Positions 5,207-60,454 of a stretch of DNA of 64,000 nucleotides are shown here, piece by piece. The first letter of the stretch is position 1. Each line of letters begins with the position of its first letter. A program made the translations under genes and the position numbers. The notes under the pieces were generated by a model. It made no database searches, was not told the origin of the DNA, and saw nothing but the letters and a program-made list of their open reading frames with translations. The stretch is taken from IMG/VR virus record IMGVR_UViG_3300009104_001827, positions 124,001 to 188,000 of that record; one strand, written 5' to 3'.

Positions 5207-5629
5207 TTACACTAAAAAGTCCGAGCAAACTCCAAAGCAGGATTGAAATTTCATATACTTTGCATTGGAAGATACTATTACTGACTTTTCGCACACCTTT
5301 TGATGTGGATACGTCCATATGTAACCTTTTGATGTTAAGGTATATGCGTCATTTTCATGCCAGAAAACATTTAAATTTACTATGTTGGACAATAATGATA
5401 ATGCCCCTATGTTTTTACAGTGAATCCAGAGGTGTTGATGGTTTCGCAAGAGGAAGTCTACGTCGCTCTCGTATTGTGGCTCATCATGTCCGAAGTATAT
5501 TCCGTCTAACGCCCAAACGTCCACCTCTGCATCATACCCACGCTTAAACGCCCTCTCCAGGTAATCTGGGGAATTCTCGTCCTTGGCATTCTTGCCGTCA
5601 ATGTTGCCTCTGTGTGCTATTAGCTTCAT
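5207..5629 (-). CDS. Small GDPD/PLC-like phosphodiesterase
   Basis: MKLIAHRGN, ENS, EVDVW, GHD, WIHCKN, GVCSD. Confidence 0.75.
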   Translation of the reverse strand: MKLIAHRGNIDGKNAKDENSPDYLERAFKRGYDAEVDVWALDGIYFGHDEPQYESDVDFLLRNHQHLWIHCKNIGALSLLSNIVNLNVFWHENDAYTLTSKGYIWTYPHQKVCEKSVIVSSNAKYMKFQSCFGVCSDFLV

Positions 5630-6995
5630 AATGTCTGAGGAAGTAGTCTAGGTCCTCTGGCGTCCCTAGTCCCCACATTTGGGATTCGTCAATTTCGTAT
5701 ATTTTAACTTTCTCCTTATTTAAAATACACTCGTTATATGTGGGGCAAACATAAAATTCGCCATTCGTCCTGATGTTTTTATCAATCATCTGTTTTGCTG
5801 CTCTAACGTAATTCTCTCCTCTTCTGAAATAATATACCCCCACCGTTGCGTGCTCGCTTATCGGCTGCTTTTCTGCCACCCTTGTTACCATTCCGTCGCT
5901 CCCAACTTCTGCGTAACTCCATTTGGGGTGGGTCGATGGAAAGGTTAATATCCCTCCGTCGATGTTGTCCCCTGTCATCGAGTACATAAACTGATTACTA
6001 TCCCAGTCTAAGTACTGGTCGGAGTTTGCTATTAGCAACGGCTCCTCGTTGTTTATGAGGTCTTCCGCGAGAAGTGTTGTGCATGCCGCCCCTTCCGTTA
6101 CTCCGTCGACTTGCACAATTTCACAATTAGGAGCTATTAGGTTTAGCGTGTGCTTTAATGCGTATTTTTCGAAATGCTCTTTTTGCACTATAAAGATAAA
6201 TTTAGCATTAATATTAAGGCTTTCCGTTACGAGCTGTATCATCGGCTTGCCTTTGACGTCTATTAGTGGCTTGGGGAAAGTATATCCCGCTTTTTCGAAA
6301 CGAGTTCCCGCTCCTGCCATAGGTATTAAAACATTCATGTTTTTGCCTTCCCATTTTGTTTGCTCTCCTTCTTTGAGGTTGAGCTTGTTGAGGTGTGTTG
6401 TGATTTTTTCATATGTTAAATCTTCGGGGTCGGTTACCGCGCACAGGTTTGCCCCAGAGTCTGCAACCGCTTTTCTTCCCGTATTGGAGTCTTCAATGAT
6501 TAGAGTCTTTTTTGCCGGAACGCCTGACTGTATCATTATCCTGTAATACATTTCGGGGTTTGGTTTTGCTCTTAAGACGTCCTCGTTGGAGTATATGTAA
6601 TCGAAGTAATTCAATATACCTTTGTTATGTAACGCACATATTACGCTTGCTCGTATTGAGTTTGACGCTAGCCCTATTTTATATCCCTTTTCTTTTAGTT
6701 TATGTAATATGAGGTCGAGTTTGAGGTCTTTTTTATATTCCTCCATTAGGGCTATTGTTGCTCTTTGTTTTCGTTCCCAGATATCGTCGTATAAAGATTC
6801 TGGTAGGCCCTTGTTTTTGGTTAATAGTTTTAGCTTTTGCGTTGTAGGTAGCCCGTCGTATGTCGAGAGGTGCTCTTCCTTGGAAATCTTGTATTTTGGG
6901 TAGTGGTTGAATAGTACGGAGTTAAGAGACCTGTAATGTAGTTCCCTTGAGTCTATTAATACTCCATCTAGATCAAATATAATTAGTTCAATCAT
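5598..6995 (-). CDS. HAD phosphatase fused to sugar-phosphate nucleotidyltransferase
   Basis: FDLDGVL, KPNP, IEDS (HAD); LIPMAGAGTRF, PKPLI, GLGTPEDL (NTP transferase). Confidence 0.9.
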   Translation of the reverse strand: MIELIIFDLDGVLIDSRELHYRSLNSVLFNHYPKYKISKEEHLSTYDGLPTTQKLKLLTKNKGLPESLYDDIWERKQRATIALMEEYKKDLKLDLILHKLKEKGYKIGLASNSIRASVICALHNKGILNYFDYIYSNEDVLRAKPNPEMYYRIMIQSGVPAKKTLIIEDSNTGRKAVADSGANLCAVTDPEDLTYEKITTHLNKLNLKEGEQTKWEGKNMNVLIPMAGAGTRFEKAGYTFPKPLIDVKGKPMIQLVTESLNINAKFIFIVQKEHFEKYALKHTLNLIAPNCEIVQVDGVTEGAACTTLLAEDLINNEEPLLIANSDQYLDWDSNQFMYSMTGDNIDGGILTFPSTHPKWSYAEVGSDGMVTRVAEKQPISEHATVGVYYFRRGENYVRAAKQMIDKNIRTNGEFYVCPTYNECILNKEKVKIYEIDESQMWGLGTPEDLDYFLRHYEANSTQRQH

Positions 6996-7740
6996 GTCTT
7001 GCTAGTTTTATTCTTATATTACCAAAATTATTTGAACCCGTCAATTGTTTATATCTGCAATTATTTAGATTCAGGTGGGTTGTGAATACCGACTCAGGCA
7101 CCTTGAGCATATACTCGGGGTAGCCTTCGTCCCAGAGAAAATGTATGGCCTCTCTGATTTTATTTGACGCACACATGTACTTCTCCATTTCCTTCGGCGG
7201 GCCAATGGCCAGCTGGTCGTTGACCTGGTTCGGTAGTGATGCCTTGTCGTAAACAAAGCTAAAGGCGAACTCCTTCTTTAATTCTTCTTCATGATTATAA
7301 ATATTATTACTTTCAAAATATGGTAGTCTAATCAATTTATTTTTAATGCAATCTTCTATTTCGTGTTTTTTTATTTGCTCTAATACTAATATGTCTGGTC
7401 TTAATCTTATTATTAAATCGTATTTAATTTTATTACTTCTTGAATATGAATTGTATAGCCTGTTGCATGAGTGCATGTTGTATAGCATTGGCAACAATCC
7501 CGGACTTATGTCTTGGGAGCAATCGGAGATTAGGTTTTTTATGGCTGGTTTTGTTTCTTCGTAGTTTGAAATATTTATTTTTTTTGGTTTATAGTAATTA
7601 GAGAAATGCTTGTAGTCCTCATCGTCCCACGTTGAAAGGAAGATGTCTGGCTTGAGCGGCCCAACTACGTTCTGAACGACCGAGTCTGCGCAGGACTTCC
7701 ACTCGTCTAGTTTTCCGCTGAAGCATAATGCTATTTTCAT
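6988..7740 (-). CDS. Putative glycosyltransferase-like protein
   Basis: MKIALCFSG, DIFLSTW, YDLIIRLRPD, NDQLAIG, PE: common phage/capsule-locus family. Confidence 0.55.
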   Translation of the reverse strand: MKIALCFSGKLDEWKSCADSVVQNVVGPLKPDIFLSTWDDEDYKHFSNYYKPKKINISNYEETKPAIKNLISDCSQDISPGLLPMLYNMHSCNRLYNSYSRSNKIKYDLIIRLRPDILVLEQIKKHEIEDCIKNKLIRLPYFESNNIYNHEEELKKEFAFSFVYDKASLPNQVNDQLAIGPPKEMEKYMCASNKIREAIHFLWDEGYPEYMLKVPESVFTTHLNLNNCRYKQLTGSNNFGNIRIKLARHD

Positions 7741-8988: not shown

Positions 8989-9017
8989 ATAATAACATTT
9001 CTCCTGCTCGATGTCAA
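8989..9017 (-). promoter_or_regulatory. sigma70-type promoter for wHTH/sugar operon
   Basis: TTGACA (9017-9012), 17 bp, TATTAT (8994-8989); ATG 6 nt after -10. Confidence 0.7.
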
Positions 9018-9467: not shown

Positions 9468-10014
9468 AGTGATCGGTATTAGCGGACCAGCGAGGGCAGG
9501 CAAAGATACCCTTTTTGAGGTATTGGATGATTTATTTGAAACCGTAAATCTTACAAGACTTGCTTTTGCCGACGCACTTAAGGCAGAATGTGACGACTTC
9601 CTAAAAACTCACACAGGAATCTCAGCCTTTACGTCAGACACCGCAGAGAAGGAGATCATAAGACCCTTTTTAGTAGCTTACGGCAGTAAGGTTCGAAGAA
9701 AAATGAACCCTCGCTGCTGGATTGAATGTATAGAAAAATCAATAAAGGAAAATAAAAAAGATACGATATATGTCTTGACTGATGTCAGGTATCCCAATGA
9801 GCTCGACTGGATAGAAGGACAAGGCGGGCTCTCTATACATGTATCAAGAGACGGCGTTCTTCCCGCGAACAGTGAAGAGGAGATTAACGACCCCATATTA
9901 AGGTCTAGGTCTAAGTTAAGCATCTCCGTCCCGACGTTTCAACAAAACTATTTCAACCAATGCAAAGAAACGATACAAAAAAAGATTCCAAGAAAACTGA
10001 TAACGAGCTTATAG
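9460..10014 (+). CDS. Deoxynucleoside monophosphate kinase
   Basis: IGISGPARAGKDT P-loop, AFADALK, TDVRYPNE. Confidence 0.9.
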   Translation: MIKVIGISGPARAGKDTLFEVLDDLFETVNLTRLAFADALKAECDDFLKTHTGISAFTSDTAEKEIIRPFLVAYGSKVRRKMNPRCWIECIEKSIKENKKDTIYVLTDVRYPNELDWIEGQGGLSIHVSRDGVLPANSEEEINDPILRSRSKLSISVPTFQQNYFNQCKETIQKKIPRKLITSL

Positions 10015-10586
10015 CTCAAATTAAAGGGGGGAACCACAAAGAACCCCTCCGAGAACTGACCGAGCGGCACACCCCACTCTATATATCGGTAATACATAAT
10101 CTCGCAAAAAGATTCTGCAATTGGAGTACAGCCCAAGACGTAATAGCAGACAAGGACTATGTAGTCTTTAGAGCGGCAGAGAAATATGACTCCACGAGGA
10201 ATACAAAATTCTCAACATTCCTAGCTAATGAAGCAAAGTGGGCATTTTTAAACAAGACACAAAAGGAAAAAAGGTTCAACAAGCACCTACTTATATCAGA
10301 TGACGGCCAATTCGAGTTCGTGGCGCCCCTTGAAGAATTCAACTCCAACGCGCCAACAGATACACTGGACTATATTTTTACGACCCTCAACGAACACCCC
10401 GACGAGAGGGTGGGAGATATATATAGACTGAGATATAAATCCGGGAAAAAGAACAAAGTCATGCCCTGGTATATGGTCGGCAACGAGATGAACCTCAGCG
10501 CCCAAGGCTGCATAAATATTCACAACAAAGCTCTCAATTACATTAAAGATAAACTAACCAAGGAAGGAATACTCAATGTTAAATAG
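9960..10586 (+). CDS. Sigma70-family RNA polymerase sigma factor
   Basis: Region 2 (AAEKYDSTRNTKFSTF) and region 4 HTH (VGNEMNLSAQGCINIHNKAL). Confidence 0.85.
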   Translation: MQRNDTKKDSKKTDNELIAQIKGGNHKEPLRELTERHTPLYISVIHNLAKRFCNWSTAQDVIADKDYVVFRAAEKYDSTRNTKFSTFLANEAKWAFLNKTQKEKRFNKHLLISDDGQFEFVAPLEEFNSNAPTDTLDYIFTTLNEHPDERVGDIYRLRYKSGKKNKVMPWYMVGNEMNLSAQGCINIHNKALNYIKDKLTKEGILNVK

Positions 10587-10953: not shown

Positions 10954-12035
10954 TGCCTCAACTAAATGTAAAATGCCCTATAAATAAATTATCCTTCGGA
11001 AACGTTTCAGTTAATATACTGAGAGAGCTCTTCAAGAAGGGGGTTGATGCGTGTGTATTTCCCACTGGCCAACCAGACCTGTCTAGCTATGACCAAGCCT
11101 CAAAGGAGTTCTACGAATGGTTAAGGAGCGCTATGGCTCGGCGTCTTACAGATGTCGACCGAAGTAATCCCACCTTAAATATTTGGCATATAAACGGAAG
11201 TGAGAACAAAATCTCAGACAAAAATACACTCTTAACGTTTCACGAAACCGGCCACCCTACGCCAGAAGAACTAAATTTAGCAAAACTATACGACAAGGTT
11301 TGCTTTGGCAGCAATTACGCAAGAGAGGCCTTTCAAGATTGCGGAGCCACAAATGTCACAAATGTCCCTATGGGATTAGACCCCGACTTATCCTGTCTCC
11401 CACAAAAGAAATCTAGCGACAATATTCATTTTGGGCTAATGGGAAAATGGGAAAGAAGAAAGCATACGTCAAAAATTATAAAATGCTGGGCAAAAACATA
11501 CGGTAACAACAATCGCTATGAATTATCATGCTGCGTAGGGAATAGTTTCCTTGAAGAAAGCCAGCTCGAATCCGCCAAACTAGAAGCCTTGGGGTCCCGG
11601 GAATTTAGCAATATTAACTTCCTTCCGTGGCTTCCAAAAAACTCCCAAGTTAACGACTTCATCAACTCAATAGACGTAGACCTCAGTGGCATGAGCGGAG
11701 CGGAGGGCTGGAACCTTCCAGCGTTCAACGCGACCGCACTAGGAAAATGGAGCATAGTACTGGACTGTACATCCCACAAAGATTGGGCCACGGAAGGGAA
11801 TTGCATCCTAATAAGCCCTTCAGGAACGGAAAGCATAGAAGACGGAATCTTCTTTACCAAAGAGTCCCCATTCAACAGGGGTGTTAAATTTACATTCAAC
11901 GAAGACTCCCTAATCAAGGCCATGGAGCTAGCGGAGCATAAATGCAAAACAGAAAACACCAAAGGGAAAGAACTCGCAACTCAATTCACCTACTCAAACA
12001 CTGTAGATAAATTACTGGATATTTGCTTCTCATAG
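10953..12035 (+). CDS. GT4-family glycosyltransferase
   Basis: GKWERRKH, AEGWNLPAFNATALGK GT-B motifs. Confidence 0.8.
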   Translation: MPQLNVKCPINKLSFGNVSVNILRELFKKGVDACVFPTGQPDLSSYDQASKEFYEWLRSAMARRLTDVDRSNPTLNIWHINGSENKISDKNTLLTFHETGHPTPEELNLAKLYDKVCFGSNYAREAFQDCGATNVTNVPMGLDPDLSCLPQKKSSDNIHFGLMGKWERRKHTSKIIKCWAKTYGNNNRYELSCCVGNSFLEESQLESAKLEALGSREFSNINFLPWLPKNSQVNDFINSIDVDLSGMSGAEGWNLPAFNATALGKWSIVLDCTSHKDWATEGNCILISPSGTESIEDGIFFTKESPFNRGVKFTFNEDSLIKAMELAEHKCKTENTKGKELATQFTYSNTVDKLLDICFS

Positions 12036-12040
12036 TGTAT
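12035..12040 (+). promoter_or_regulatory. GTGTA-box (putative phage late promoter)
   Basis: GTGTAT 11 nt before ATG 12052; one of many copies. Confidence 0.55.
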
Positions 12041-12051
12041 ATAATATATAC

Positions 12052-12390
12052 ATGCCACTATACACTTTTGAACATCCGGAAACGGGGGAACATCAAGATG
12101 TTTTATTCGGAATGAATGATGACAAAAGCTACGTAGACAGCGAGGGAACTTCCTGGATTAGGGTTTGGCACTCCCCCCAAGCGACAGTAGACGCCAACAT
12201 AGACCCATTCTCCTCAAGTCAATACCTTGAGAAAACCAACACGAGGGGAACGATGGGAGACCTTCAGGAGCGCAGCAGGGAACTGAGTGAAAAGCGCGCG
12301 AGCAAGCTGGGCTACGACCCAATTAAGAAGAAATACTTCGAGGAATATTCAAAAAAAAGAAACGGCATCAAGCATCACTTAGACACATAA
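12052..12390 (+). CDS. FmdB-like small protein (zinc-ribbon Cys absent)
   Basis: MPLYTFEHPETG start resembles the FmdB MPxYxYxC pattern without Cys. Confidence 0.5.
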   Translation: MPLYTFEHPETGEHQDVLFGMNDDKSYVDSEGTSWIRVWHSPQATVDANIDPFSSSQYLEKTNTRGTMGDLQERSRELSEKRASKLGYDPIKKKYFEEYSKKRNGIKHHLDT

Positions 12391-12412
12391 TAGAGGCAAC
12401 CAGCCTCAATAG

Positions 12413-12418
12413 GTGTAA
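12413..12418 (+). promoter_or_regulatory. GTGTA-box
   Basis: GTGTAA 8 nt before ATG 12427, preceded by hairpin GAGGC-AACCA-GCCTC (12393-12407). Confidence 0.55.
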
Positions 12419-12426: not shown

Positions 12427-14340
12427 ATGCCGGACTTCAAAGACAACCCTCTTTTCAATGACCAAATAAGAAAATTCGTTGGGGCAGTACCCAACGTTTC
12501 CTTTGATTATATCTGGGATGAATCATTAGCTAAGTGGGTTCCCAGCAAAGGGGTAAGCGTCACAATTGATGACGTGGATCTAGACATAGACCTAGAGGAC
12601 GAGGTGACCCACGGACTACTTGCAATCACCAATGCTAAACTTGATACAATAAATACAAGTCTTAGTAATCTGGACTCAGACTCCTCAGACGAAACGACGC
12701 ACGCACTACTGACCCTAAACAACACTAAACTTGACGCAATAAACTCAAAACTAGAAAACCTAGATTCCTCAGACGAAACCACACACAACCTACTTACGCT
12801 CACAAATACAAAACTGGACCTTTCCAATACAAAGTCCGACCTGACCAATGTCAAGCTGGATTCTGCAAACACCAAGCTAGATTCCGCAAACACCAAGCTA
12901 GATTCCGCAAACACCAAGCTTGCCAGCCTAGAAGACCTCACAGAGCATACTCACGTAATGCTCAATCAGAACCACACTCACCTGCAAAACGTAAAATCCG
13001 CAGTAGACTCATTAAAGTCGGCGAACCAGGCAGACGCCTTACTTTTAAGAACAATCCAAACCGCAGCAGACGTTAAACTCGGAGAGATAAAGGGAATCAA
13101 CACCAGCATATTGACTGAAAGCGAAGAGGCTAACGTAAACCTCCTAAATATCGCCTCAACAAACTCAGGCATCCTAGATTCCTCGGAGGACCTAGAGGTC
13201 TTAGTTGGAACTTCAAACACCTTACTAGGAGAGGTCAAGCAGGCAGTGGAAGACCTAGAACTCAACATTGCTGGCGACGCAGAAACGCATAGAATACTTT
13301 CAGGAATTTCCGGCCAAGATAAATCACATTATTTTGAAAACGAAGAGCTGCTTAGATATATAAACGACGCAAACGAGGACACCAACCTCTCCTTACAAGA
13401 ACTAAAAGGAAACTATCGAGACCTGACTTTTCATGTTAGGAAATTTGAAGAAGAAACAATAATACAAGAGTGTCCAGACGAAACTTTTTCACCCAACCTA
13501 AGCGACCCCAGGAGTTTCCCCGACAGGGTTCACAACAAAGCCACAACCAACGGGAGAATCAACGACTCAACCACTAAAGAAATAAACCAAGTCCCAATAG
13601 TTGCTGAAGGCTTCAACAAAGATGTCGCAGAAAGACATGAAGTGTTCGACGAAGCTATGCCATTTTCTATAAAAATGGAGAGCTACAAAGGGTCCTCATC
13701 CGGATACCATTCAATATACCCCTTCGACAAGCGATTGGGTCTCGATGACAAAATTACAATCTACAACGACAGCCCATACCCCTTCGACATCAGCTTCAGA
13801 GGAGGAGACAAAACAACTCTTGCGGAAGGATTTTCCATGGAGCTATCCAAGGAAGAAGCTGCCCAAGCTTCGGTGAAAAGAGATTATACAATATCTGGCT
13901 TCGAAATAAGATACTCCATAGAGAGAATGTATACCCCTGAAAATAATTACTATGATCCAGAAACCGATAAATACCCAATCAACAGGCAACAAACCCACTC
14001 TAGGTTAGGGGTAGACGGAATACTTGCGGATGCACAATATATATATTTAAGATTTGAGGAGACATGGAAAAGGACAGCAATAGCAAGTTGGGCAACATGC
14101 GTTTTCAGAACCGCTTCATCCGCAAAAATACACTACTTCGAGCCCTATACTACAGCAAGCCATCTTTACGTCAACACTCTCGACGGCCTGAAAAGAATTG
14201 CGATTGCCGACTGGATTACATGCGAGCGCGTTCCACTAGAATGCCACAATAATATCTGGGCCGACAATAATTATCTATATGCTAAAACTAAATCCAATTG
14301 GAGAAAGTTTCCACTAGCAACTGATTATGAAAATATCTAA
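12427..14340 (+). CDS. Putative virion fibre-like protein (coiled coil plus C-terminal triple repeat)
   Basis: Heptad NTKLD repeats; three YLY...WKR..L..W-like units at C-terminus. Confidence 0.55.
   Translation: MPDFKDNPLFNDQIRKFVGAVPNVSFDYIWDESLAKWVPSKGVSVTIDDVDLDIDLEDEVTHGLLAITNAKLDTINTSLSNLDSDSSDETTHALLTLNNTKLDAINSKLENLDSSDETTHNLLTLTNTKLDLSNTKSDLTNVKLDSANTKLDSANTKLDSANTKLASLEDLTEHTHVMLNQNHTHLQNVKSAVDSLKSANQADALLLRTIQTAADVKLGEIKGINTSILTESEEANVNLLNIASTNSGILDSSEDLEVLVGTSNTLLGEVKQAVEDLELNIAGDAETHRILSGISGQDKSHYFENEELLRYINDANEDTNLSLQELKGNYRDLTFHVRKFEEETIIQECPDETFSPNLSDPRSFPDRVHNKATTNGRINDSTTKEINQVPIVAEGFNKDVAERHEVFDEAMPFSIKMESYKGSSSGYHSIYPFDKRLGLDDKITIYNDSPYPFDISFRGGDKTTLAEGFSMELSKEEAAQASVKRDYTISGFEIRYSIERMYTPENNYYDPETDKYPINRQQTHSRLGVDGILADAQYIYLRFEETWKRTAIASWATCVFRTASSAKIHYFEPYTTASHLYVNTLDGLKRIAIADWITCERVPLECHNNIWADNNYLYAKTKSNWRKFPLATDYENI
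12859..12921 (+). repeat. 3 x 21-bp tandem repeat (DSANTKL)
   Basis: GATT(C)(T/C)GCAAACACCAAGCT(A/T) three times. Confidence 0.95.
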
Positions 14341-18089: not shown

Positions 18090-18580
18090 TAGAAATCAGT
18101 AAATGTAGCAGTTGCGGTTACTCTTCCCCCTACCTGCGAAGACGCGCCTATACTTTCGTTATGGTTTAGTAAAAACTTCTCCCCGCCAAACATAAAAGTT
18201 TGGCCAGGTGGAATATATAATTCGGACACAACCTTTGATTGGTTTCCTGGATCAACATCCTTGCGAATGGTTACGTCGCTCCACACTGCTGGCGCAGACC
18301 CAGGAACGTCTGCTGGACTTGACTCAGATATAGCTTGCCACGCCTTAGAATCATGCCTCACACGGTCATCGATTCCATACACGCCGCCATTACCCCCGTC
18401 GGCAGCCCACGGACTTAGGTCCGCAGGATTGAACCCTATCGCCTGAGCGACAAAAAGATCAATAGTTTCTCCCTCTGTGGTAGTGTTACAGAAATATATT
18501 CCTAAGTTTGCGTATTTTTGGCTGCTGGGTGCGGAAATAATTTCTGTATATTCATTACTTACTACTATATTTTTAATCAT
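18089..18580 (-). CDS. Small structural protein with inserted CBM5/12-like module
   Basis: Internal YGIDDRVRHDSKAWQA...VPGSAPAVW segment. Confidence 0.55.
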   Translation of the reverse strand: MIKNIVVSNEYTEIISAPSSQKYANLGIYFCNTTTEGETIDLFVAQAIGFNPADLSPWAADGGNGGVYGIDDRVRHDSKAWQAISESSPADVPGSAPAVWSDVTIRKDVDPGNQSKVVSELYIPPGQTFMFGGEKFLLNHNESIGASSQVGGRVTATATFTDF

Positions 18581-20624: not shown

Positions 20625-20634
20625 GATGATTACT

Positions 20635-20640
20635 TTACAC
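20635..20640 (-). promoter_or_regulatory. GTGTA-box upstream of portal
   Basis: TTACAC on + strand. Confidence 0.55.
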
Positions 20641-20771: not shown

Positions 20772-20777
20772 GTGTAA
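20772..20777 (+). promoter_or_regulatory. GTGTA-box upstream of DUF2827 pair
   Basis: GTGTAA 9 nt before ATG 20787, abutting CCCC-GAAA-GGGG hairpin. Confidence 0.55.
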
Positions 20778-23686: not shown

Positions 23687-23698
23687 CCTTAAGTTTCA

Positions 23699-25017: not shown

Positions 25018-25042
25018 AGCCCCCCATTGGGGGGCTTTTTTT
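25018..25042 (+). terminator. Rho-independent terminator
   Basis: AGCCCCCC-ATT-GGGGGGCT followed by T-run. Confidence 0.85.
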
Positions 25043-25056
25043 GTGTAAACCCAACC

Positions 25057-26765: not shown

Positions 26766-26804
26766 TTAGACAAAAAAGGCATCAAGGTGTATATAACATA
26801 CATC

Positions 26805-44017: not shown

Positions 44018-44028
44018 TGTAAGTTATC

Positions 44029-46557: not shown

Positions 46558-47056
46558 CCATAGGATCTTCAAATTTTTCCCCAGGATTCTCGGTGGCCTC
46601 TTCCGGGGCGTCGTTAAAGATTAACATGCACGCCATAAATCTATCGCTCTGCTCGGGGTATCTCTGCTTCATGTTTGGGTCCGTTATACATCTCCCCATA
46701 AATCCGTCGCCGGATTCTCCCTCAGATGGGGTGGGGTATCGCTTGTCTTCATTAGATAAAAAGTTATTCTTGTCCTTTTGCTCCTCTTCGTCTGTTGACG
46801 GCAACTCTGGAGCTGGCGCAGAGGGGTAGAGCTTTTCGTACTCTACGAACTTAAAGGCCTCTTCTATCTGGTCATAAGAAGTCATGATCCTTTGTTGCAC
46901 CCAGTCTTCCAAAACATCGCCATCCTGCAAGAGCTCAAATAGGCCCTGCGCGCATTTTGCAATTTGATACAACTGAGATTTGTACATCCGAATGGAGTTC
47001 GAGTCCTCCGCCTCAGACTCCATTCTGGAGAATTTAATATCCTCTAGATCATTCAT
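46511..47056 (-). CDS. Hypothetical head-associated protein
   Basis: SQLYQIA..LEDWVQQRI and PTP...FMGRC...RFMAC motifs; GTGTAA 9 nt upstream. Confidence 0.55.
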   Translation of the reverse strand: MNDLEDIKFSRMESEAEDSNSIRMYKSQLYQIAKCAQGLFELLQDGDVLEDWVQQRIMTSYDQIEEAFKFVEYEKLYPSAPAPELPSTDEEEQKDKNNFLSNEDKRYPTPSEGESGDGFMGRCITDPNMKQRYPEQSDRFMACMLIFNDAPEEATENPGEKFEDPMVKEEEAFDPQKPVLP

Positions 47057-47078
47057 CCTATTTAATTACACCAAAAAA

Positions 47079-47545: not shown

Positions 47546-48007
47546 CTATTCCTCCAGAATTTCGATAAGCTTTTTATGCTTGGGGTTATTTGGGTCAAGC
47601 TCAAACGGTGGCCCATTATCAATTACAACATTTGTGCCAAGATTCTCAGACTTAAAAGCCTTTGTGAGTTTGTTTTTCAAGATTGTCCTATTCCCCGAAG
47701 GAAAAACCCCTGCGCGCACAGCAACCTCCTGGAGTTCGGTCAGACTCATTCCCGCCATATTCTCCTCAAATATCCTGGCGTCATTCGTTCCGTACGGATT
47801 GCTCTTTCTTACCTCCAGAATCTCCTCTAGCTTTTTAACGTACTCTAAGTTCTGCTCGTACGTTTTTCCTGTGGTTTGATTTAAATCTTTTAATTCCGGC
47901 TTCCTGGCGGCCTTGGCGGCCTTAGCTCGCTTAGCTGGCTTAACCCCTCGGGCGGGCTTACCCTTACTAGAGGCAGCTCTCTTCTTGTTTGTTTTTTTAG
48001 TACTCAT
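47546..48007 (-). CDS. Hypothetical protein with basic N-terminus
   Basis: K/A-rich histone-like N-terminus; SD AAGGAAG. Confidence 0.7.
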   Translation of the reverse strand: MSTKKTNKKRAASSKGKPARGVKPAKRAKAAKAARKPELKDLNQTTGKTYEQNLEYVKKLEEILEVRKSNPYGTNDARIFEENMAGMSLTELQEVAVRAGVFPSGNRTILKNKLTKAFKSENLGTNVVIDNGPPFELDPNNPKHKKLIEILEE

Positions 48008-48062
48008 ACTTCCTTATACCTTTCTTAGGAGATACACATATATATGGTGTGCGTGAAAAACA

Positions 48063-48091
48063 AAAAAATCCACCCATAAGGTGGATTTTTT
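48063..48091. terminator. Bidirectional intrinsic terminator after major capsid gene
   Basis: AAAAAATCCACC-CATAA-GGTGGATTTTTT. Confidence 0.85.
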
Positions 48092-48116: not shown

Positions 48117-49298
48117 TTATACAATTATGCCTGTGAGAACCTTGTCGTCAAGGATCATGCGACCCTCTTCGATAGCGCCATAGTAACCAATCTTTTGTGA
48201 TCGGGATACCCATTGGTCGTCAACGACGAGATCGAACTCAGAACCACTTTCCGCGTCGGTTGCGACAGCGCGAAGCATGGATTCCTTGGATAGATCGATA
48301 CCGAGGCAGATTTCCTCTTTGTCTCCGTCGAACGTTTCGTCGGTGGCGTTTTTAACATCAGCATCGCCGACTCCGCCATCGCCGTGCTTGTCCCAGTCCT
48401 TATCGCCAGAAGCAGTGTCAAACACTGTGTTCCACTTTTGCTCCTTACCCATTTCGTTGATTTCCATGATGGAAACACCATAGAACTCAGGAATGCCAGC
48501 GGAATTAAAGATCTTATCTCTAAAGCTGTCGGTTCCAGCAATGTCTCCGCCGCCCGCGATTTTACCGCCGCCGCCATCAGAATGAGTTACATTACTTCTT
48601 GTGTTAATTGGGTTATAAGCCAATCCACGCAGTTCCTCAACGATTTCGGGAGAAACGATGAGGTCAGTAACCCCACGACCCCTGCGGTCGGCAGGAGTGC
48701 CTTTCGTCCACGAAGTGTTAATTCTCTTAGCGAGAGTAAACAGTTTGTTAAGGTCTGCCAAAAGGAAGCGATCCTTCGAATGCGACCGGAAGACATGCTT
48801 CAGTCCATTCGTTTCGGCATTGGCCAAGGCAGTCATAATCATAACCGCAGAAGTCTTCTCTTGCTTGAGAAGGATTTCCTGGGCAATTCTTGTAAATGTC
48901 TTACTAACGACATCAAGCCTGGAACGTTGAGCGAATCTCTTGTCAAAAGAAACCGCACTATCCAAACGATAGGTCGTAAATTTCATTTCCTGTTGGACAG
49001 GAGCCACGTGATTGGTCGGAAGGCCGCCAGGGGAGTTTTGACTCCAGATCTGGATGTAGTCTTCGTCTGTAATATCGTGGTAAAGGTCCAACGGAATACT
49101 AGCGTTGTCTTCAGAACCAAACTGAAGAGAGCTAAATAGGTTGCTCAGCGTAGGAGCCGTGTTAACGACTTCGGCCAAAAGAGGTCCGATGAAATCGCCG
49201 AGGGCCGCTTGGGCTTCATAAGCTACATCGCGGTTCTTGGAAGCCATAGCTTTAATAAGCTCGACTTGCTCTGGAGTTCTTTCGATTTTTATTTCCAT
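48117..49298 (-). CDS. Major capsid protein
   Basis: 393 aa in protease-decoration-capsid order; TDLIVSPEIVEELR, GYYGAIEEGRMILD; strong SD, terminator. Confidence 0.85.
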   Translation of the reverse strand: MEIKIERTPEQVELIKAMASKNRDVAYEAQAALGDFIGPLLAEVVNTAPTLSNLFSSLQFGSEDNASIPLDLYHDITDEDYIQIWSQNSPGGLPTNHVAPVQQEMKFTTYRLDSAVSFDKRFAQRSRLDVVSKTFTRIAQEILLKQEKTSAVMIMTALANAETNGLKHVFRSHSKDRFLLADLNKLFTLAKRINTSWTKGTPADRRGRGVTDLIVSPEIVEELRGLAYNPINTRSNVTHSDGGGGKIAGGGDIAGTDSFRDKIFNSAGIPEFYGVSIMEINEMGKEQKWNTVFDTASGDKDWDKHGDGGVGDADVKNATDETFDGDKEEICLGIDLSKESMLRAVATDAESGSEFDLVVDDQWVSRSQKIGYYGAIEEGRMILDDKVLTGIIV

Positions 49299-51554: not shown

Positions 51555-51599
51555 AACTCTTTAGAATAATCTTACACTTATTATATTTCTTCGAGAAAA

Positions 51600-55046: not shown

Positions 55047-56101
55047 AGGGAATCAGACTTTGATATTCCAAGAACTCTAGCTTTCCAATCTGGCATTTTT
55101 TCCAGCTCATCCATTTCGTTGCTAATGAGCTTTTGTTGCATTTGAGCCATCTTTAACATGATACCCCTTTCCTCTTCCTCCTGAAACAGCTGCACTAGGT
55201 TAAGTATGCTTGCGTTCTTTGAAACCTGGCTTGCTATTCTTTTGGATCTGTCGCCCTGAAGCTTGGAGATTAAGGATTCCATTCTTTTTTCGCATTGATT
55301 GTATTCTTCGCTTTTTGTTTTTAGGATTTCAGTCAACCTAATGGTCATGTCTTGCTGCTCCTCCGCTTCATCAAACATTCTATTGAGTTTGTCCATTGCG
55401 CTTTGAATTCTTTTTAAATGGATATAATCCATACAAACATTAATATACAGATTTATTTCGTCCGTGGTAAGATCCGGCTTATCCCAGGTAGCCCTAACAA
55501 ATTCTGCCTCAAACAAATTGCGGTCCTCAAGGCCCGTGTAAGTTTCAATTACCTGAAGAAACCGTGGTGCAGACATAAACTTCCTTAAAGCCTCTATGCA
55601 TCGTTTGTATTGCACCGTCATTTTATCCTCGGAAATTTCGACGCCGACGCAATCCTGAATTTTCTTCATTATTTTGCTATCTGCCTTCGGAGGGGAATAT
55701 TTAATGTTCATTGCGGTTTCATTTTTAGGAACATCTAAACCTTCCTCGTGAATAAAATCATGAACCGCCCAGAACTCTTTGCTCATGTGTTTTATTTCTG
55801 CCCCGGCAAATACGAGCCTTGCTAACGCCACGCTACTCACATCTGCGGCGGAGTTGTTTCGAATAAATTCCTTTTGCTCCTCTGTGAGCTGGATATCATC
55901 TTTTTTGCTAATGTGCCGAGTAGAATAGTCAATCCCCGCTTCCTTCATGAATTTTCTAACAAGTCGCCCCTCCCTTGTTCTGCCGTCAAGGGAGTCGTCC
56001 ATAAAAACGTCTCTAGTTAATTTGGACAAATCTCCAATTATTGGAGCATTCTCTTTAATAAATGCCTTTTGATCTTCCGTAAGCTCCGGCAGCGGTTTCA
56101 T
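55043..56101 (-). CDS. Hypothetical protein, possible terminase small subunit
   Basis: Two LTE(D/E)QK.FI helical repeats plus coiled coil; upstream of terL. Confidence 0.4.
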   Translation of the reverse strand: MKPLPELTEDQKAFIKENAPIIGDLSKLTRDVFMDDSLDGRTREGRLVRKFMKEAGIDYSTRHISKKDDIQLTEEQKEFIRNNSAADVSSVALARLVFAGAEIKHMSKEFWAVHDFIHEEGLDVPKNETAMNIKYSPPKADSKIMKKIQDCVGVEISEDKMTVQYKRCIEALRKFMSAPRFLQVIETYTGLEDRNLFEAEFVRATWDKPDLTTDEINLYINVCMDYIHLKRIQSAMDKLNRMFDEAEEQQDMTIRLTEILKTKSEEYNQCEKRMESLISKLQGDRSKRIASQVSKNASILNLVQLFQEEEERGIMLKMAQMQQKLISNEMDELEKMPDWKARVLGISKSDSL

Positions 56102-56897
56102 ATATAATAATTTCTCCTTTATCTAAAATAGACGCAGCCTTGTCTTTGAAAATTTTCTTTAAATTTTTCAATTGCTTATAGCCTGCTTTTCGACCCCTTT
56201 CGCTCGTCTTATACCCCATCACCTTAGCGACTTCCTCTTCATCCATATGTTGGACGTAAAGCATATCGTAAACCTTGTATTGCTTCTCGGGCAACGCCTC
56301 TTTCATTGCCTTCGCTAATTTACCCGCAGCCTCCTCAATGTCGACTTGAGTATCCTGTATGGAGCCAACCTCATGAGTGTGATGTTCTATGGTGACAGCC
56401 ATCTTAATGTCATAGGCTGCCTTCTTAGTTTTGCTCCACTTTAAATACAATGGGCACTCGCTATCCTGTAGCCCGCTTGAGGTGAAGCCGCACAAACTGC
56501 CCGGGGTTATTCCTGGATCCTTCCCGGATCTGGACTGATTAAAAGGGCAATTAAGGCAAGGTCGGACAAAATTAGAATAGTTATTACGCAAAATATTTTT
56601 CATTTGATTAGTAATAATCTTATTGATCCACGGCCCTAGTGGGCGGCTCTGATCCCATTGGTCCCATTTTTTAAAAATATGAGCGCGTATAATTTGCTCT
56701 ACATCCTCAAAATCAAACCAGGACAGGGAGTCCAAAAACCACTTGCCCCGTCGCTTTCTTATCTCCAGATTAATGTCTTCGAATTTATCCTCAAAAGAGA
56801 ACTGGGGAGCTTCACCATCAAGATCCTTGTCTTTTGGAGGTTTTTCTTCTTTTTCTTTGTCTTTTTTTCTTGGGCGCTTCATTGGACGAATCTTCAA
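56055..56897 (-). CDS. Second sigma70-like factor with Cys4 insertion
   Basis: FEDVEQIIRAHIFKKW..W...PWINKII..QMKN (region 2), LPEKQYKVY..EEEVAKVMG (region 4); start may be 56882. Confidence 0.75.
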   Translation of the reverse strand: MKIRPMKRPRKKDKEKEEKPPKDKDLDGEAPQFSFEDKFEDINLEIRKRRGKWFLDSLSWFDFEDVEQIIRAHIFKKWDQWDQSRPLGPWINKIITNQMKNILRNNYSNFVRPCLNCPFNQSRSGKDPGITPGSLCGFTSSGLQDSECPLYLKWSKTKKAAYDIKMAVTIEHHTHEVGSIQDTQVDIEEAAGKLAKAMKEALPEKQYKVYDMLYVQHMDEEEVAKVMGYKTSERGRKAGYKQLKNLKKIFKDKAASILDKGEIIIYETAAGAYGRSKGIY

Positions 56898-57242: not shown

Positions 57243-57839
57243 CTATATTAAATACCCAGCGATTAGCTTTGCCTGGTTTTGCATAAACTCTTCCGTCGTC
57301 ATGCCCTCCACATCCCCAGGAAATGCTTCGATTTTTGAGATATAATCCACGCCCAATATTCCGATAACCTTACCATTTAAAGTCGTAATCGGAACATTAT
57401 AAATTGCCTGCACACCCTTAGAGTTCAACAAGGACCTGAAACCGCTGTCTCGAATTTCATTAATATCCAAGCAAGAAAAAGACCCAACCGAGACTAATTC
57501 CGTAATATATTCGCTATAGTTAGAAACCCTATGATCTTGAGAATGAATACATTCAGAGCTTATCCCCGCCTCCACAGTTTCGTGCGTACAGCTAAATTTT
57601 TGCTGGCCTCTTCCGGAAAAAAAATGCCCTCCATTATGAAATTCTAGAACGTAAGCCCTACCGGAGAACATCATCTGCTTAGTATACTTCAGTGCCGTAT
57701 TAACGTTAGATCCCGCCCTTACGTGCCCCTCTACCGTATTCTTGTGGCGCTCAGACCATTTCTTTTTCGCCCAAACCCCAACTAAGGTAGCAACAGAAGA
57801 CACGATAGTGGCAATGGCTGTGAGCAATTCAGTTTCCAT
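57243..57839 (-). CDS. N-terminal TM plus GAF-like domain (holin-T-like topology)
   Basis: TM 5-23; RAYVLEFHNG, VPITTLNGKVIGILGVDY GAF strands; GTGTAA 9 nt upstream. Confidence 0.6.
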   Translation of the reverse strand: METELLTAIATIVSSVATLVGVWAKKKWSERHKNTVEGHVRAGSNVNTALKYTKQMMFSGRAYVLEFHNGGHFFSGRGQQKFSCTHETVEAGISSECIHSQDHRVSNYSEYITELVSVGSFSCLDINEIRDSGFRSLLNSKGVQAIYNVPITTLNGKVIGILGVDYISKIEAFPGDVEGMTTEEFMQNQAKLIAGYLI

Positions 57840-57844: not shown

Positions 57845-58159
57845 TTATTTACACTTACAAACTCCATTAATGCGCTGCTTTCTGTATACAAACGCAGATC
57901 CGAAAGTACATATAATAACCGCTAATACAATCCATCCTAACCCAGATGTAGGCTGATCGGTATTAATTGATACAGAATTTGAATAGTACTCCTCCCTGTT
58001 TATTGTCCCATTTTTATCTGTATCAACAGCTTCGAATGACTCTACTACATTTGGCACCGGAGCGGACGGTGCGGCGTTTCGACTTTTAAATATCTTCGGG
58101 CCACTACAGCCAGTGCTCATAAATATTAACAATATTAATAATATAATTTTATTCATCAT
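57845..58159 (-). CDS. Lipoprotein with EF-hand and C-terminal TM
   Basis: Lipobox STGC, DTDKNGTINREE, TM GLGWIVLAVIICTFGSAFVY. Confidence 0.7.
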   Translation of the reverse strand: MMNKIILLILLIFMSTGCSGPKIFKSRNAAPSAPVPNVVESFEAVDTDKNGTINREEYYSNSVSINTDQPTSGLGWIVLAVIICTFGSAFVYRKQRINGVCKCK

Positions 58160-58793: not shown

Positions 58794-59738
58794 TTACATT
58801 ATTTCTATAATGGCCCAAAGGGCCGTAATCGCCATTGCTGCAATAATTAAATATTTTTTATTAAACTTTTTCTTCTCAGGCTTTGGATCAGGTTCTGGAT
58901 CAGGTTCTGGATCAGGTTCTTTCTCCTCGGACTTAACGTCTAGATAATAGGGTCCGACGGCATTAATGATCGCATCCCGATATAAAGAATCCTCCATGAA
59001 AAAGTACCCTTTGTTCCCGAACCATCGCCCCCAGCTATTTTGAAACTCCCAATATAGCTTCCCGTCAATCTCCTTCCAGCCAATCATCGACACTGCATGC
59101 CCACCGACAACTTCGGAGGACAAAAACTTATCAGAATTCACAACGCCCGTGCTGTCGGTTTGAAAAAAATGCCTTCTGACCTTAATCGACGTCCATAGAG
59201 GCTCTTTTAATAAAGCCGACTTAATCCGGTCTGTATCTCCCTTGGGAATTACATAGTATCCATTAATCTTATACTTAAGCGCGTTCTCCGGAGCCTCAGG
59301 AGACATGGGCGCCCCCTCCTTGCGGAGGTCTGGCCAATATTTCTCTTCGCAGCACCCTTCTTTGACCAGCCCCTTGCATGCGCCACGGATGGTCGTGCCG
59401 GAATAATCTTCTCCCGGCCAAGGGTCATATAATTGCCCTTTTTTATAAATCCACATAGCACTAGGCTCCTTGTCCTTGAATTCTTCCGTCGAACCGTAAA
59501 CAACGCGGCCGCTGTGGCCAACGCAAGACCCAATTGACCCTTGGTTCTTGACGCGAGGCGTAAGGTCGCGCCTGGAAAACTCCTTTAGATCAACCTCTCT
59601 GGCTCGCCATATCCTTGAAGTGATCCAGTCTCTGGAATCAACGGGGGCATCAGGCACGTTTAATTTACATCTTCCGAAATATTTAGCTCTAGCTTTTTGC
59701 GCTATCCAACTTCCCGATAATATATTTAAGTATTTCAC
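58794..59738 (-). CDS. Papain-like (C1) cysteine protease with C-terminal membrane anchor
   Basis: NQGSIGSCV (Cys), GGHAV (His), QNSWG (Asn); PEPD linker, basic residues, TM; alternative start GTG 59657. Confidence 0.88.
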   Translation of the reverse strand: MKYLNILSGSWIAQKARAKYFGRCKLNVPDAPVDSRDWITSRIWRAREVDLKEFSRRDLTPRVKNQGSIGSCVGHSGRVVYGSTEEFKDKEPSAMWIYKKGQLYDPWPGEDYSGTTIRGACKGLVKEGCCEEKYWPDLRKEGAPMSPEAPENALKYKINGYYVIPKGDTDRIKSALLKEPLWTSIKVRRHFFQTDSTGVVNSDKFLSSEVVGGHAVSMIGWKEIDGKLYWEFQNSWGRWFGNKGYFFMEDSLYRDAIINAVGPYYLDVKSEEKEPDPEPDPEPDPKPEKKKFNKKYLIIAAMAITALWAIIEIM

Positions 59739-60402
59739 TTCTCAGTATGTCCTCTTTTCCAAATCTAAATGCATGTATACCTCTCTTTACACTTTCCCTG
59801 TCGTTAAACAGGTCAAACATGGCCGGAAATCCACTCTTTCCATTGATGTCGCTCTGCATAAAGTCTCCACAAATAAACAATTTGCAATTCTCCCCAATTC
59901 TAGTGACAAGCGTCGTAAGCTCCTTATAGGTAAAGTTTTGAGCTTCATCTGCAATTACGATCTTATCCTTCCAGTTTGCTCCTCTAAGATAATTTATCGG
60001 CATTGCAGAAATTCTGCCACTTTCAAGCATTTCCCTTTTGGCAGTATTGTTTTTAGGAAGCATTTCATAAAGCTTGTCCTCCAGTGGCGCCATATAGGGA
60101 TTGAATTTTTCATCTATATCCCCAGGCAAGGCCCCAAGCCCCTTTTCTGCGCTCTCAATGACTGTGCGGACATATAGTAAATCCATCTTATCTGACGCAC
60201 TCAAAAGCCTCAACGCAGAATAAACTGCCATATAAGTTTTAGTGGAGCCCGCCGGTCCGGCGACAAACATTATCTTAGTATCATCGTTGAACGCGATAGA
60301 CAAAAACCTTTTCTGCCTATCCGTCAACCTTAGTGAATGGATATGAACGCTTTGTGCCAATTGTGGGATAACAAAATTTTTTTTAGACTTATCGTGAGCC
60401 AT
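59689..60402 (-). CDS. phoH: PhoH-family ATPase
   Basis: GPAGSTKT, YLRGANW, DEAQN, GDFMQSD. Confidence 0.93.
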   Translation of the reverse strand: MAHDKSKKNFVIPQLAQSVHIHSLRLTDRQKRFLSIAFNDDTKIMFVAGPAGSTKTYMAVYSALRLLSASDKMDLLYVRTVIESAEKGLGALPGDIDEKFNPYMAPLEDKLYEMLPKNNTAKREMLESGRISAMPINYLRGANWKDKIVIADEAQNFTYKELTTLVTRIGENCKLFICGDFMQSDINGKSGFPAMFDLFNDRESVKRGIHAFRFGKEDILRSEILKYIIGKLDSAKS

Positions 60403-60454
60403 TAGCTATATATGTATATACACACTACAGAACGATAAAGTGTACTTATATATA

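What the first reader, a model, noticed from the sequence alone, without database searches (positions are those of the whole stretch)
5207..60445. Genome-wide GTGTA box just upstream of start codons: candidate phage late promoter giving near-leaderless mRNA
Seen: GTGTA(A/T/C) on the coding strand 6-12 nt before starts at 5207, 12035, 12413, 20635, 20772, 25043, 26787, 31060, 35415, 44017, 47066, 57849 and 60440, and 15-24 nt before at 48032, 51572 and 60418. Most of these genes lack a Shine-Dalgarno, and several boxes abut hairpins (12393, 20761, 25018). Inference: a single-box promoter read by a phage sigma, analogous in logic to T4 late promoters but with a different sequence.
Basis: partly seen in the sequence, partly recalled or inferred. 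Interest (0 to 1): 0.7.

Follow-up and report, generated by a model that had tools for sequence, protein, structure and literature searches.

The report
Start-codon-locked GTGTA phage promoter box
An uncultured 211-kb marine phage and its many relatives keep an invariant five-base box, GTGTA, exactly 9-10 bases before the start codons of some 40 genes; it is most likely a one-box promoter read by a phage sigma factor, giving messenger RNAs with almost no leader.

Summary
All 16 listed boxes are there. In the window, 16 of 39 GTGTA lie 7-25 nt before a start on the coding strand (0.4 expected). Genome-wide GTGTA is the most start-enriched specific pentamer (32/105, 16.7x), yet the most under-represented pentamer overall.

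The spacing peaks sharply at 9-10 nt in this genome and in two relatives fetched whole. No one-mismatch variant is enriched. In 42 distinct relatives the box is invariant in one intergenic spacer.

Coding regions avoid GTGTA on both strands, the antisense strand most, so the signal acts on DNA. With the start codon's A as +1, the box occupies -15..-11. That is the register of this phage's sigma-70-type early promoters, which are also locked to start codons.

Marine metatranscriptome contigs show an off/on boundary at the box before the capsid operon, and ends within 1-3 nt of start codons. There is no -35 box. The phage has two sigma-family genes and no detectable RNA polymerase gene.

Closest known: the single-element tAATGTAtA promoters of phiEco32 gp36. 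Not shown: exact start sites, which sigma reads the box, timing, host. A new variant of a known kind.

The parts
5208..5212 (-). GTGTA box, 7 nt before ATG of gene 4385..5200 (271 aa)
12035..12039 (+). GTGTA box overlapping the stop of the upstream gene, 12 nt before ATG of 12052..12390 (112 aa; weak hit to a transcriptional regulator)
12413..12417 (+). GTGTA box just after a short hairpin (12393-12407), 9 nt before ATG of 12427..14340 (637 aa)
20636..20640 (-). GTGTA box, 11 nt before the GTG start (20624) of 18573..20624 (683 aa). Preceded by three phased GACTTT(T) repeats at 20641-20680. A metatranscriptome contig ends at 20627-20629.
20772..20776 (+). GTGTA box, divergent partner of the box at 20636; 10 nt before ATG of 20787..21926 (379 aa)
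25018..25042 (+). Intrinsic terminator (8-bp G+C stem plus T7) that ends the highly expressed 23039..24976 transcript and runs directly into box 25043
25043..25047 (+). GTGTA box, 9 nt before ATG of 25057..25710 (217 aa). The terminator-plus-box arrangement is conserved in relative G002.
26787..26791 (+). GTGTA box, 13 nt before ATG of 26805..27263 (152 aa)
31060..31064 (+). GTGTA box inside the 3' end of the upstream gene, 11 nt before ATG of 31076..31342 (88 aa). Conserved before the orthologue in G001 and G002.
35415..35419 (+). GTGTA box inside the 3' end of the upstream gene, 10 nt before ATG of 35430..36704 (424 aa)
44017..44021 (+). GTGTA box overlapping the DnaE stop codon, 7 nt before the first and 10 nt before the second ATG of the ClpB gene (to 46557). 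Conserved in G001 and G002.
47067..47071 (-). GTGTA box, 10 nt before ATG of 46511..47056 (181 aa)
48033..48037 (-). GTGTA box, 25 nt before ATG of 47546..48007 (153 aa); the leader carries an SD-like GGTATAAGGAAG. A metatranscriptome contig reaches 48031.
48063..48091 (-). Strong intrinsic terminator (13-bp stem) after the capsid operon, upstream of box 48033
51573..51577 (-). GTGTA box in the 45-nt spacer between the terminase and the three-gene 528/210/393-aa operon (taken to be the capsid operon from its position next to the terminase), 18 nt before ATG 51554. Invariant in 42 distinct relatives. Transcript depth goes from 0 to 95 here.
57850..57854 (-). GTGTA box, 10 nt before ATG of 57243..57839 (198 aa), heading the gene row that holds the 280-aa sigma and the terminase
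60419..60423 (-). GTGTA box, 16 nt before ATG of the PhoH-like gene 59689..60402; back to back with box 60440
60440..60444 (+). GTGTA box, 10 nt before ATG of 60455..60661 (68 aa)
9960..10586 (+). Sigma-70-family gene (208 aa; region 2 only by Pfam), third gene of an operon behind the early-type promoter at 9132-9160. Candidate reader of the box. Poorly conserved.
56055..56897 (-). ECF-like sigma gene (280 aa from TTG; probably 275 aa from ATG 56882) with sigma2 and sigma4-like domains and a conserved four-cysteine insert. Conserved at 52-95% identity next to the terminase throughout the clade. Candidate reader of the box.

Best explanation
GTGTA is the only conserved element of a one-box middle/late promoter class of this phage clade.

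Proposed mechanism. Host core RNA polymerase carrying a phage sigma-70-family protein binds the box as the upstream half of a -10-type element: GTG at -15..-13, T at -12, A at -11. The reading sigma is either the conserved ECF-like 280-aa protein or the early-expressed 208-aa protein. The polymerase melts the A/T-rich 9-10 bp that follow and starts at, or 1-3 nt before, the A of the start codon. The mRNA is then leaderless or nearly so and needs no Shine-Dalgarno. Where the box lies 16-25 nt upstream, the longer leader tends to carry its own SD-like sequence.

The early genes work the same way with a different promoter: A-tract, TTGACA, 17 nt, TAnnnT, 6 nt, ATG.

Shown: the statistics, geometry, conservation, two-strand avoidance and transcript boundaries. 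Inferred: the sigma assignment, the exact start sites, the timing.
For: Enrichment and spacing lock.

Stringency: no one-mismatch variant is enriched in any of three genomes.

Conservation. The same two start-locked signals appear in G000, G001 and G002: TGACA ending 29 nt and GTGTA ending 9-10 nt before ATG. Boxes are kept before orthologous genes. The box is invariant in 42 distinct terminase-downstream spacers whose neighbouring bases vary.

Geometry: the early hexamer-to-ATG distance peaks at 6 nt, so a box-to-ATG distance of 10 puts the box's TA at -12/-11.

DNA-level signal. GTGTA/TACAC is the most under-represented pentamer (observed/expected 0.49, rank 1 of 1024). Against synonymous-codon shuffles, coding DNA has 21 sense copies against 55 +/- 7 and 32 antisense copies against 113 +/- 10; both relatives show the same.

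Promoter-like placement: back-to-back boxes (TACAC upstream of 8 of 67 boxes, 0.7 expected) and A/T tracts or terminator T-tracts directly upstream.

Transcripts. In run X1 (99.5% identical strain) depth is 0 over the terminase and 95 from 51554 on. One contig ends at 20627-20629, 7-9 nt after box A20636. Contigs at depth 95-100 end within 1 nt of the start-codon A at 51554 and 23039.

SD-like sequences occur only with long spacers.

Two phage sigma genes; no beta/beta' genes and no T7-like RNA polymerase hit.

Precedent: phiEco32 gp36 promoters have the single element tAATGTAtA, start 6-8 bp downstream and lack a -35 box (PMC8948821). That places the start 9-11 nt after the A of TGTA, the same distance as here.
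Against: There is no nucleotide-resolution 5'-end mapping. Only assembled metatranscriptome contigs were available, and their ends lie 2, 7-9 and 19-21 nt after three boxes. The contig reaching 48031, 2 nt after box 48033, overshoots the predicted start by about 8 nt unless there is read-through or a second promoter.

The most abundant transcript of the second stretch (23040-25026, depth 100.7) starts at an ATG with no exact box upstream; it has only ATGTA, 13 nt before.

Boxes 20772 and 25043 were silent in that sample.

The 280-aa sigma has a sigma4-like domain, yet no -35 element was found. It also sits in a gene row headed by a box itself. The 208-aa sigma is poorly conserved (32% identity to G001) while the box is invariant.

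Many transcription-unit heads carry neither promoter type.

The host is unknown.
Confidence: 0.6

Rival explanations
1. Initiator-type promoter. An unrecognised phage RNA polymerase, or a strongly modified host enzyme, starts within or right after GTGTA, giving 9-14-nt leaders without SD. This would resemble the short start-site-proximal promoters of phiKZ/AR9 non-virion polymerases.
For: A contig reaches 48031, only 2 nt after box 48033, beyond a strong terminator and with an uncovered gap upstream. There is no -35 element. Most genes of this phage have no recognisable family, so a divergent polymerase could be hidden among them.
Against: No beta/beta' or T7-like polymerase domains were found. 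The T7-like control was silent, so that result is weak. The giant ORF carries RCC1 and CBM5/12 domains, not a polymerase. A 2-nt-sharp box-to-ATG spacing has no reason under this model, whereas it equals the early -10 geometry. The A/T-rich stretch lies downstream of the box, where a -10-type element would melt.
Confidence: 0.12
2. Extended -10-like promoter read by the host's primary sigma after a phage protein disables -35 recognition, as gp39 does for the middle/late promoters of Thermus phage P23-45. The phage sigmas would serve other promoters.
For: The box contains TG next to a TA and lacks a -35 element. The early promoters show that the host enzyme is used. The precedent is in PMC3950348.
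Against: TG abuts TA, without the one-base gap of TGnTAnnnT. No T is conserved at the -7 position. All five bases are invariant, including the first G. Two phage sigma genes would be left without a visible promoter class.
Confidence: 0.12
3. An RNA-level signal in the 5' leader: a substitute ribosome-binding site, or a processing or regulator-binding site that acts on translation.
For: The 9-10-nt distance from the start codon is in the range of SD spacing. Half of the boxes precede tightly packed inner genes. These genes lack SD.
Against: An RNA signal would not be purged from the antisense strand of genes, which is depleted 3.5-fold. Boxes at 16-25 nt carry their own SD-like sequence. The depth goes from 0 to 95 at box 51573, which is a transcript boundary. 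At least two contigs end downstream of the box, so the box is absent from those RNAs.
Confidence: 0.06
4. Operator for a phage repressor or activator that sits beside an unrecognised core promoter.
For: The box is short and invariant. At one promoter (box 20636) there are additional phased GACTTT repeats that look like regulator sites.
Against: No second conserved element exists that could be the core promoter. The box is asymmetric and strictly oriented. Its position equals that of a -10 element.
Confidence: 0.05

Closest known systems
phiEco32 gp36-dependent middle/late promoters (single element tAATGTAtA; PMC8948821)
   Same: One short, highly conserved element with a TGTA core flanked by A/T and no -35 box. 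It is read by a phage-encoded ECF-like sigma on host core polymerase. The start lies 6-8 bp after the element, 9-11 nt after the A of TGTA, which is the distance from the box to the ATG here. gp36 and the window's 280-aa sigma both hit phrog_1740.
   Different: The core here is GTGTA, and ATGTA is not enriched. Direct BLASTP and hhalign between the two sigmas are not significant. The 280-aa sigma has a sigma4-like domain and a four-cysteine insert, whereas gp36 is reported to lack region 4. Here the promoter is locked to the start codon (leaderless), and there are about 40 copies in a 211-kb genome against six mapped promoters in phiEco32.
T4-type late promoters (TATAAATA at -10; gp55, gp33 and the gp45 clamp; PMC2988020)
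   Same: A -10-only promoter for late genes read by a phage sigma-family protein on host core polymerase.
   Different: The sequence differs. T4 late mRNAs have leaders with SD. Homologues of gp55, gp33 and gp45 were not looked for specifically.
Extended -10 middle/late promoters of Thermus phage P23-45 (PMC3950348), and -10 boxes adjacent to ORFs in Deinococcus-Thermus (PMC12340547)
   Same: A switch from -35/-10 early promoters to -10-only later promoters. A -10 element placed directly before the ORF gives leaderless mRNA.
   Different: Those are read by the host's primary sigma and keep the TAnnnT hexamer. Here only GTGTA is conserved, and the phage brings its own sigmas.
-10 elements of ECF sigma factors (own knowledge: short CGT-type cores such as CGTA or CGTC)
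   Same: A short G/T-rich -10 core ending in TA. The best fold and family matches of the 280-aa protein are ECF sigmas.
   Different: ECF promoters depend on a strong -35 (AAC) element. None is present here.

Membership tests
Core promoter element (-10 type) of a sigma-70-family holoenzyme | Oriented element upstream of transcription units, selected against elsewhere in the DNA | tested here: met
   16.7x enrichment before starts on the coding strand. Back-to-back boxes occur in divergent spacers. GTGTA is the most under-represented pentamer and is depleted on both strands of coding DNA.
Core promoter element (-10 type) of a sigma-70-family holoenzyme | Fixed distance to the transcription start (TA at about -12/-11) | tested here: inconclusive
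   The box-to-ATG spacing of 9-10 nt equals the early hexamer geometry. Only contig ends were available, lying 2, 7-9 and 19-21 nt after three boxes.
Core promoter element (-10 type) of a sigma-70-family holoenzyme | Bound and melted by a sigma factor on core RNA polymerase | not testable with these tools
   Two candidate sigma genes were found.
phiEco32 gp36-type single-element promoter | Single conserved element without a -35 box | tested here: met
   The position matrix of 43 sites and the k-mer search upstream of 67 sites find no second box.
phiEco32 gp36-type single-element promoter | Consensus tAATGTAtA | tested here: not met
   Only the TGTA core and the A/T flanks are shared. ATGTA shows no enrichment at 9-10 nt (1.0x).
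phiEco32 gp36-type single-element promoter | Cognate sigma is a gp36 homologue without region 4 | tested here: inconclusive
   Both proteins hit phrog_1740 (E 6e-6 and 2e-45). BLASTP gives E 1.7 and hhalign a probability of 0.1%. The 280-aa model has a sigma4-like domain.
T4-type late promoter | TATAAATA box at -10 | tested here: not met
   The conserved element is GTGTA. Positions downstream of it are only A/T-rich.
T4-type late promoter | gp55/gp33/gp45 machinery | not tested
   No specific search was made. The two sigma genes hit generic sigma families only.
Extended -10 promoter of the primary sigma | TG one base upstream of a TAnnnT hexamer | tested here: not met
   TG abuts TA, and no T is conserved four bases after the TA.
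Leaderless mRNA | 5' end at or within a few nt of the start codon | tested here: inconclusive
   Metatranscriptome contigs end at 51554 (the A of the ATG), at 23040 (second base of the ATG) and at 20627-20629 (3-5 nt before the GTG). Contig ends are not mapped 5' ends.
Leaderless mRNA | No Shine-Dalgarno, with the promoter -10 directly before the ORF | tested here: met
   SD-like 4-mers occur in 2 of 70 short-spacer leaders. Both promoter classes are start-locked in three genomes.

The most novel reading that the evidence does not exclude
A large, cosmopolitan and uncultured clade of marine jumbo phages runs both its early and its later gene expression almost entirely through leaderless mRNAs, by locking two promoter classes to start codons. 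The later class would be defined by an invariant 5-bp box, GTGTA, read without any -35 contact by a previously undescribed viral sigma family: ECF-like, with a conserved four-cysteine insert, and widespread among viral proteins in the ESM Atlas. That would be a new sigma-promoter pair and a phage-wide translation strategy not described for marine phages.
Probability: 0.4. Interest if true: 0.75.

Novelty: new variant of a known kind. Interest (0 to 1): 0.6.

Why it matters
It gives a simple, testable regulatory code for a phage lineage in which nearly every structural and regulatory protein is an orphan. The lineage has at least 596 related contigs in IMG/VR and is expressed in marine metatranscriptomes.

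The box marks transcription-unit starts and true start codons, which improves annotation. It corrected several over-extended ORFs here, such as 25027 to 25057 and 26787 to 26805.

It pairs a minimal 5-bp promoter with candidate sigmas that can be tested in vitro. It also extends the link between -10-only promoters and leaderless translation, known from Thermus and Deinococcus systems, to marine phages.

The genome-wide purging of the box from both strands shows cleanly how strongly a short promoter signal can shape a genome's composition.

Tried and rejected
**Cultured relatives.** Megablast of 20 kb found none. tblastn of the terminase found at best 27% identity, to Bacillus phages.

**Function of box-preceded genes.** PHROGs gave almost no hits; only PhoH and a weak regulator.

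**Host.** ClpB homologues are about 40% identical across many phyla. A 'moraphage' paper (PMC12619734) could not be tied to this clade. The tmRNA tag is only a lead.

**Nucleotide-level start sites.**
- Only Logan contigs of RNA runs were available, and both read-laying runs are used.
- The look-up of encoding contigs returned what appear to be DNA metagenome contigs; none gave a transcript end.

**Third promoter class for box-less genes.** No further start-locked pentamer exists in any of the three genomes. Relatives of the highly expressed 425-aa gene were too few to compare.

**Degenerate boxes.** One-mismatch variants are not enriched.

**Phage RNA polymerase.** None was found.

**Specific homology of either sigma to phiEco32 gp36.** Not significant.

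**G002 and the 208-aa sigma.** G002 lacks that sigma, but it also lacks the whole homologous 60-140-kb region, so it is incomplete and nothing follows.

**Literature.** No paper links GTGTA to a phage promoter.

**Not run.** Complex prediction of sigma with DNA was not run, because that tool gives no verdict for DNA partners.

Full report
**What the window is.** The window is bases 124001-188000 of a single 211,117-bp IMG/VR virus record (source record). CheckV rates the record complete. It encodes ribonucleotide reductase, a DnaE-type polymerase, ClpB, a T4-type terminase and a PhoH-like protein, while most other proteins match no family. No cultured relative was found. At least 596 related contigs exist in IMG/VR, with terminase identity of 72-100%. 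Marine metatranscriptomes hold the phage.

**The observation.**
- GTGTA as a word is rare: 39 in the window against 60.5 +/- 8 in shuffles.
- Sixteen of the 39 lie 7-25 nt before a start codon on the coding strand, against 0.4 expected (P 4e-22).
- With my own ORF calls for the whole genome, 32 of 105 occurrences fall in the 38 nt before starts (16.7-fold, P 6e-30). Of all 1024 pentamers only AAAAA, a composition effect at 4.3-fold, has a lower P.
- After correcting over-extended starts, about 43 sites are start-proximal.
- Their position matrix reads t/a, A, A/G, GTGTA, A/T, then A/T-rich sequence. Nothing is conserved at a -35-like distance. The only upstream enrichments are A/T tracts and TACAC, the partner box of divergent pairs (8 of 67 sites against 0.7 expected).

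**Spacing and stringency.** The number of bases between the box and the ATG peaks at 9-10: 19 sites in this genome, 10 in G001 and 15 in G002. Twelve permuted control pentamers are flat at about 0.4% per distance. Scanning every pentamer at every distance from called starts leaves two start-locked signals in all three genomes.
- TGACA ending 29 nt before the ATG. This is the -35 box of an early promoter class built as A-tract, TTGACA, 17 nt, TAnnnT, 6 nt, ATG.
- GTGTA ending 9-10 nt before the ATG.

No one-mismatch variant of GTGTA is enriched. The two classes never occur before the same gene.

**Conservation.** Two relatives were fetched whole: G001 (194.5 kb, 35% G+C) and G002 (125.7 kb, incomplete).
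- Both show the same box at the same spacing.
- Boxes precede orthologues of the 683-, 528-, 379-, 217-, 198-, 153- and 88-aa genes, of PhoH and of ClpB in one or both of these genomes.
- The spacer between the terminase and the next gene holds a GTGTA in all 61 related loci that could be scored, which give 42 distinct sequences. The bases just beside and after the box vary, and the box is mostly 9-12 nt from the start.

**DNA-level or RNA-level signal.** GTGTA/TACAC is the most under-represented of all pentamers in this genome (observed/expected 0.49, rank 1 of 1024), even counting the functional copies. I compared coding regions with shuffles that keep each protein and its codon usage.
- Sense strand: 21 observed against 55 +/- 7.
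- Antisense strand: 32 observed against 113 +/- 10.
- Both relatives behave the same way.

A ribosome-binding or RNA-processing signal would not be purged from the antisense strand. A promoter would.

**Geometry.** In the early class the TAnnnT hexamer ends 6 nt before the ATG. Its A is therefore at -11 if transcription starts at the A of the ATG, which is the leaderless arrangement.
- A box-to-ATG distance of 10 puts the TA of GTGTA at -12/-11 and GTG at -15..-13. A distance of 9 shifts this by one base.
- The A/T-rich stretch lies where the bubble would open.
- Short-spacer leaders almost never hold SD-like 4-mers (2 of 70), whereas long-spacer leaders often do (8 of 31; P 0.001).

**Transcript evidence.** Only assembled contigs of RNA runs were available.
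- In run X1, whose strain is 99.5% identical, one contig of depth 95 covers the three-gene 528/210/393-aa operon. I take this to be the capsid operon from its position next to the terminase; none of its proteins matches a family. The contig stops at 51552 plus two unaligned letters, that is at the A of the ATG at 51554. The terminase side has depth 0. A strong promoter therefore lies in the 45-nt spacer, whose only conserved element is the box.
- A contig ends at 20627-20629, which is 7-9 nt after box A20636 and 3-5 nt before the GTG start.
- A contig of depth 100.7 begins at 23040, the second base of an ATG, and ends in the terminator at 25018-25042. This transcript has no exact box upstream, only ATGTA 13 nt before the ATG.
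- A contig reaches 48031, 2 nt after box 48033 and beyond the 13-bp-stem terminator at 48063-48091. This does not fit a start 9-10 nt after the box unless there is read-through or a second promoter.
- Boxes 20772 and 25043 were silent in this sample.

These data support transcript starts at or near start codons and a promoter at box 51573. They do not fix the distance from box to start.

**Who reads it.**
- No beta/beta' genes were found. A T7-like polymerase search found nothing, but its control was silent. The 6589-aa ORF carries RCC1 and CBM5/12 repeats.
- Two sigma-70-family genes lie in the window.
- The 208-aa protein (9960..10586) sits in an operon behind an early promoter at 9132-9160. 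Its timing makes it the natural trigger. It is poorly conserved: 32% identity to G001 and a single IMG/VR relative.
- The 280-aa ECF-like protein (56055..56897) is conserved at 52-95% identity beside the terminase throughout the clade, with a nearly invariant region 2 and a four-cysteine insert.
- Its predicted structure has sigma2 and sigma4-like domains, and every one of the 50 listed PDB fold matches is a sigma factor (best E 2e-3). It belongs to a large family whose nearest ESM Atlas clusters are all viral.
- Its conservation matches the invariance of the box, but it lies in a gene row headed by a box itself.

A cascade is plausible: host sigma, then the 208-aa sigma, then box promoters including the 280-aa sigma gene. 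This is not shown.

**Comparison with known systems.**
- The closest is phiEco32. Its gp36 holoenzyme uses the single element tAATGTAtA, starts 6-8 bp downstream and has no -35 box (PMC8948821). The TGTA core, the A/T flanks and the distance from TGTA to the start all match. The first G, the start-codon lock and the sigma do not. Both sigmas hit phrog_1740, but direct comparisons are not significant.
- T4 late promoters share only the logic (PMC2988020).
- P23-45 extended -10 promoters (PMC3950348) and -10 boxes adjacent to ORFs in Deinococcus-Thermus (PMC12340547) share the -10-only and leaderless features, but they keep a TAnnnT hexamer and use the host sigma.
- Full-text searches found no paper linking GTGTA to a phage promoter.

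**Verdict.** It is a new variant of a known kind. The direct tests are 5'-end mapping and in vitro transcription with each sigma.

Noticed in passing
window 1840-1868(-), 8989-9017(-), 9132-9160(+), 25717-25745(+), 29225-29253(+), 31348-31376(+); dozens more at genome 3-62 kb: A second, more conspicuous promoter class: A-tract, TTGAC(A/T), 17 nt, TAnnnT, then exactly 6 nt to the ATG or GTG. This implies leaderless early mRNAs. Many of these genes begin ATGATTAA (M-I-K). The class is start-locked in all three genomes.
   Followed up: partly
genome 55016-55391(-), outside the window (L105:317-692): Phage-encoded one-piece tmRNA (Rfam RF00023, 128 bits) with the tag ANNIVRFEDFTACGEELALAA. From memory, tags starting ANNIV are typical of cyanobacteria, so this is a host lead only. 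Four tRNA genes lie at 36.8-37.2 and 50.2 kb.
   Followed up: partly
window 20641-20680(-): Three phased GACTTT(T) repeats, about 9-11 bp apart, lie directly upstream of the box of the 683-aa gene. Three or four such repeats occur at the orthologous promoter in G001, G002 and many IMG/VR relatives. Possibly a gene-specific regulator site or a bent-DNA element.
   Followed up: no
window 23039-24976(+): Two paralogous genes (215 and 425 aa, with similar N-termini MAKKILAEE and MASKILAEE) form the most abundant transcript of that stretch in a marine metatranscriptome (depth 100.7). It starts at the ATG and ends at the terminator, with no exact GTGTA box or TTGACA promoter upstream. The genes evolve fast; only a near-identical IMG/VR contig was found.
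   Followed up: partly
window 61387-64000(-), continuing to genome 205156: A giant ORF of 6589 aa with RCC1-type repeats and a CBM5/12 module. Probably a fibre or adhesin-like virion protein; no polymerase domains.
   Followed up: partly
window 56055-56897(-): The ECF-like sigma carries four invariant cysteines (C109, C112, C131, C143 of the 275-aa form) in a low-confidence insert between the sigma2 and sigma4-like domains. This suggests a zinc-binding module unusual for sigma factors.
   Followed up: no
window 48340-48600(-), 3' third of the 393-aa gene 48117..49298: Metatranscriptome strains differ strongly here: 26 substitutions and 3 indels in 380 nt, and one contig replaces 87 nt with 51 other letters. 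The rest of the operon is 99.5% identical, so this is a hypervariable patch in a highly expressed, probably capsid, protein.
   Followed up: no
whole genomes G000, G001, G002: Other strongly avoided words: CCGG is completely absent from G001, and CACGT/ACGTG is depleted in G000 (0.5) and G002 (0.2). These look like restriction-site avoidance that differs between relatives.
   Followed up: no
window 36714-38678(+): A 654-aa protein with bacterial thrombospondin type-3 (calcium-binding) repeats.
   Followed up: no
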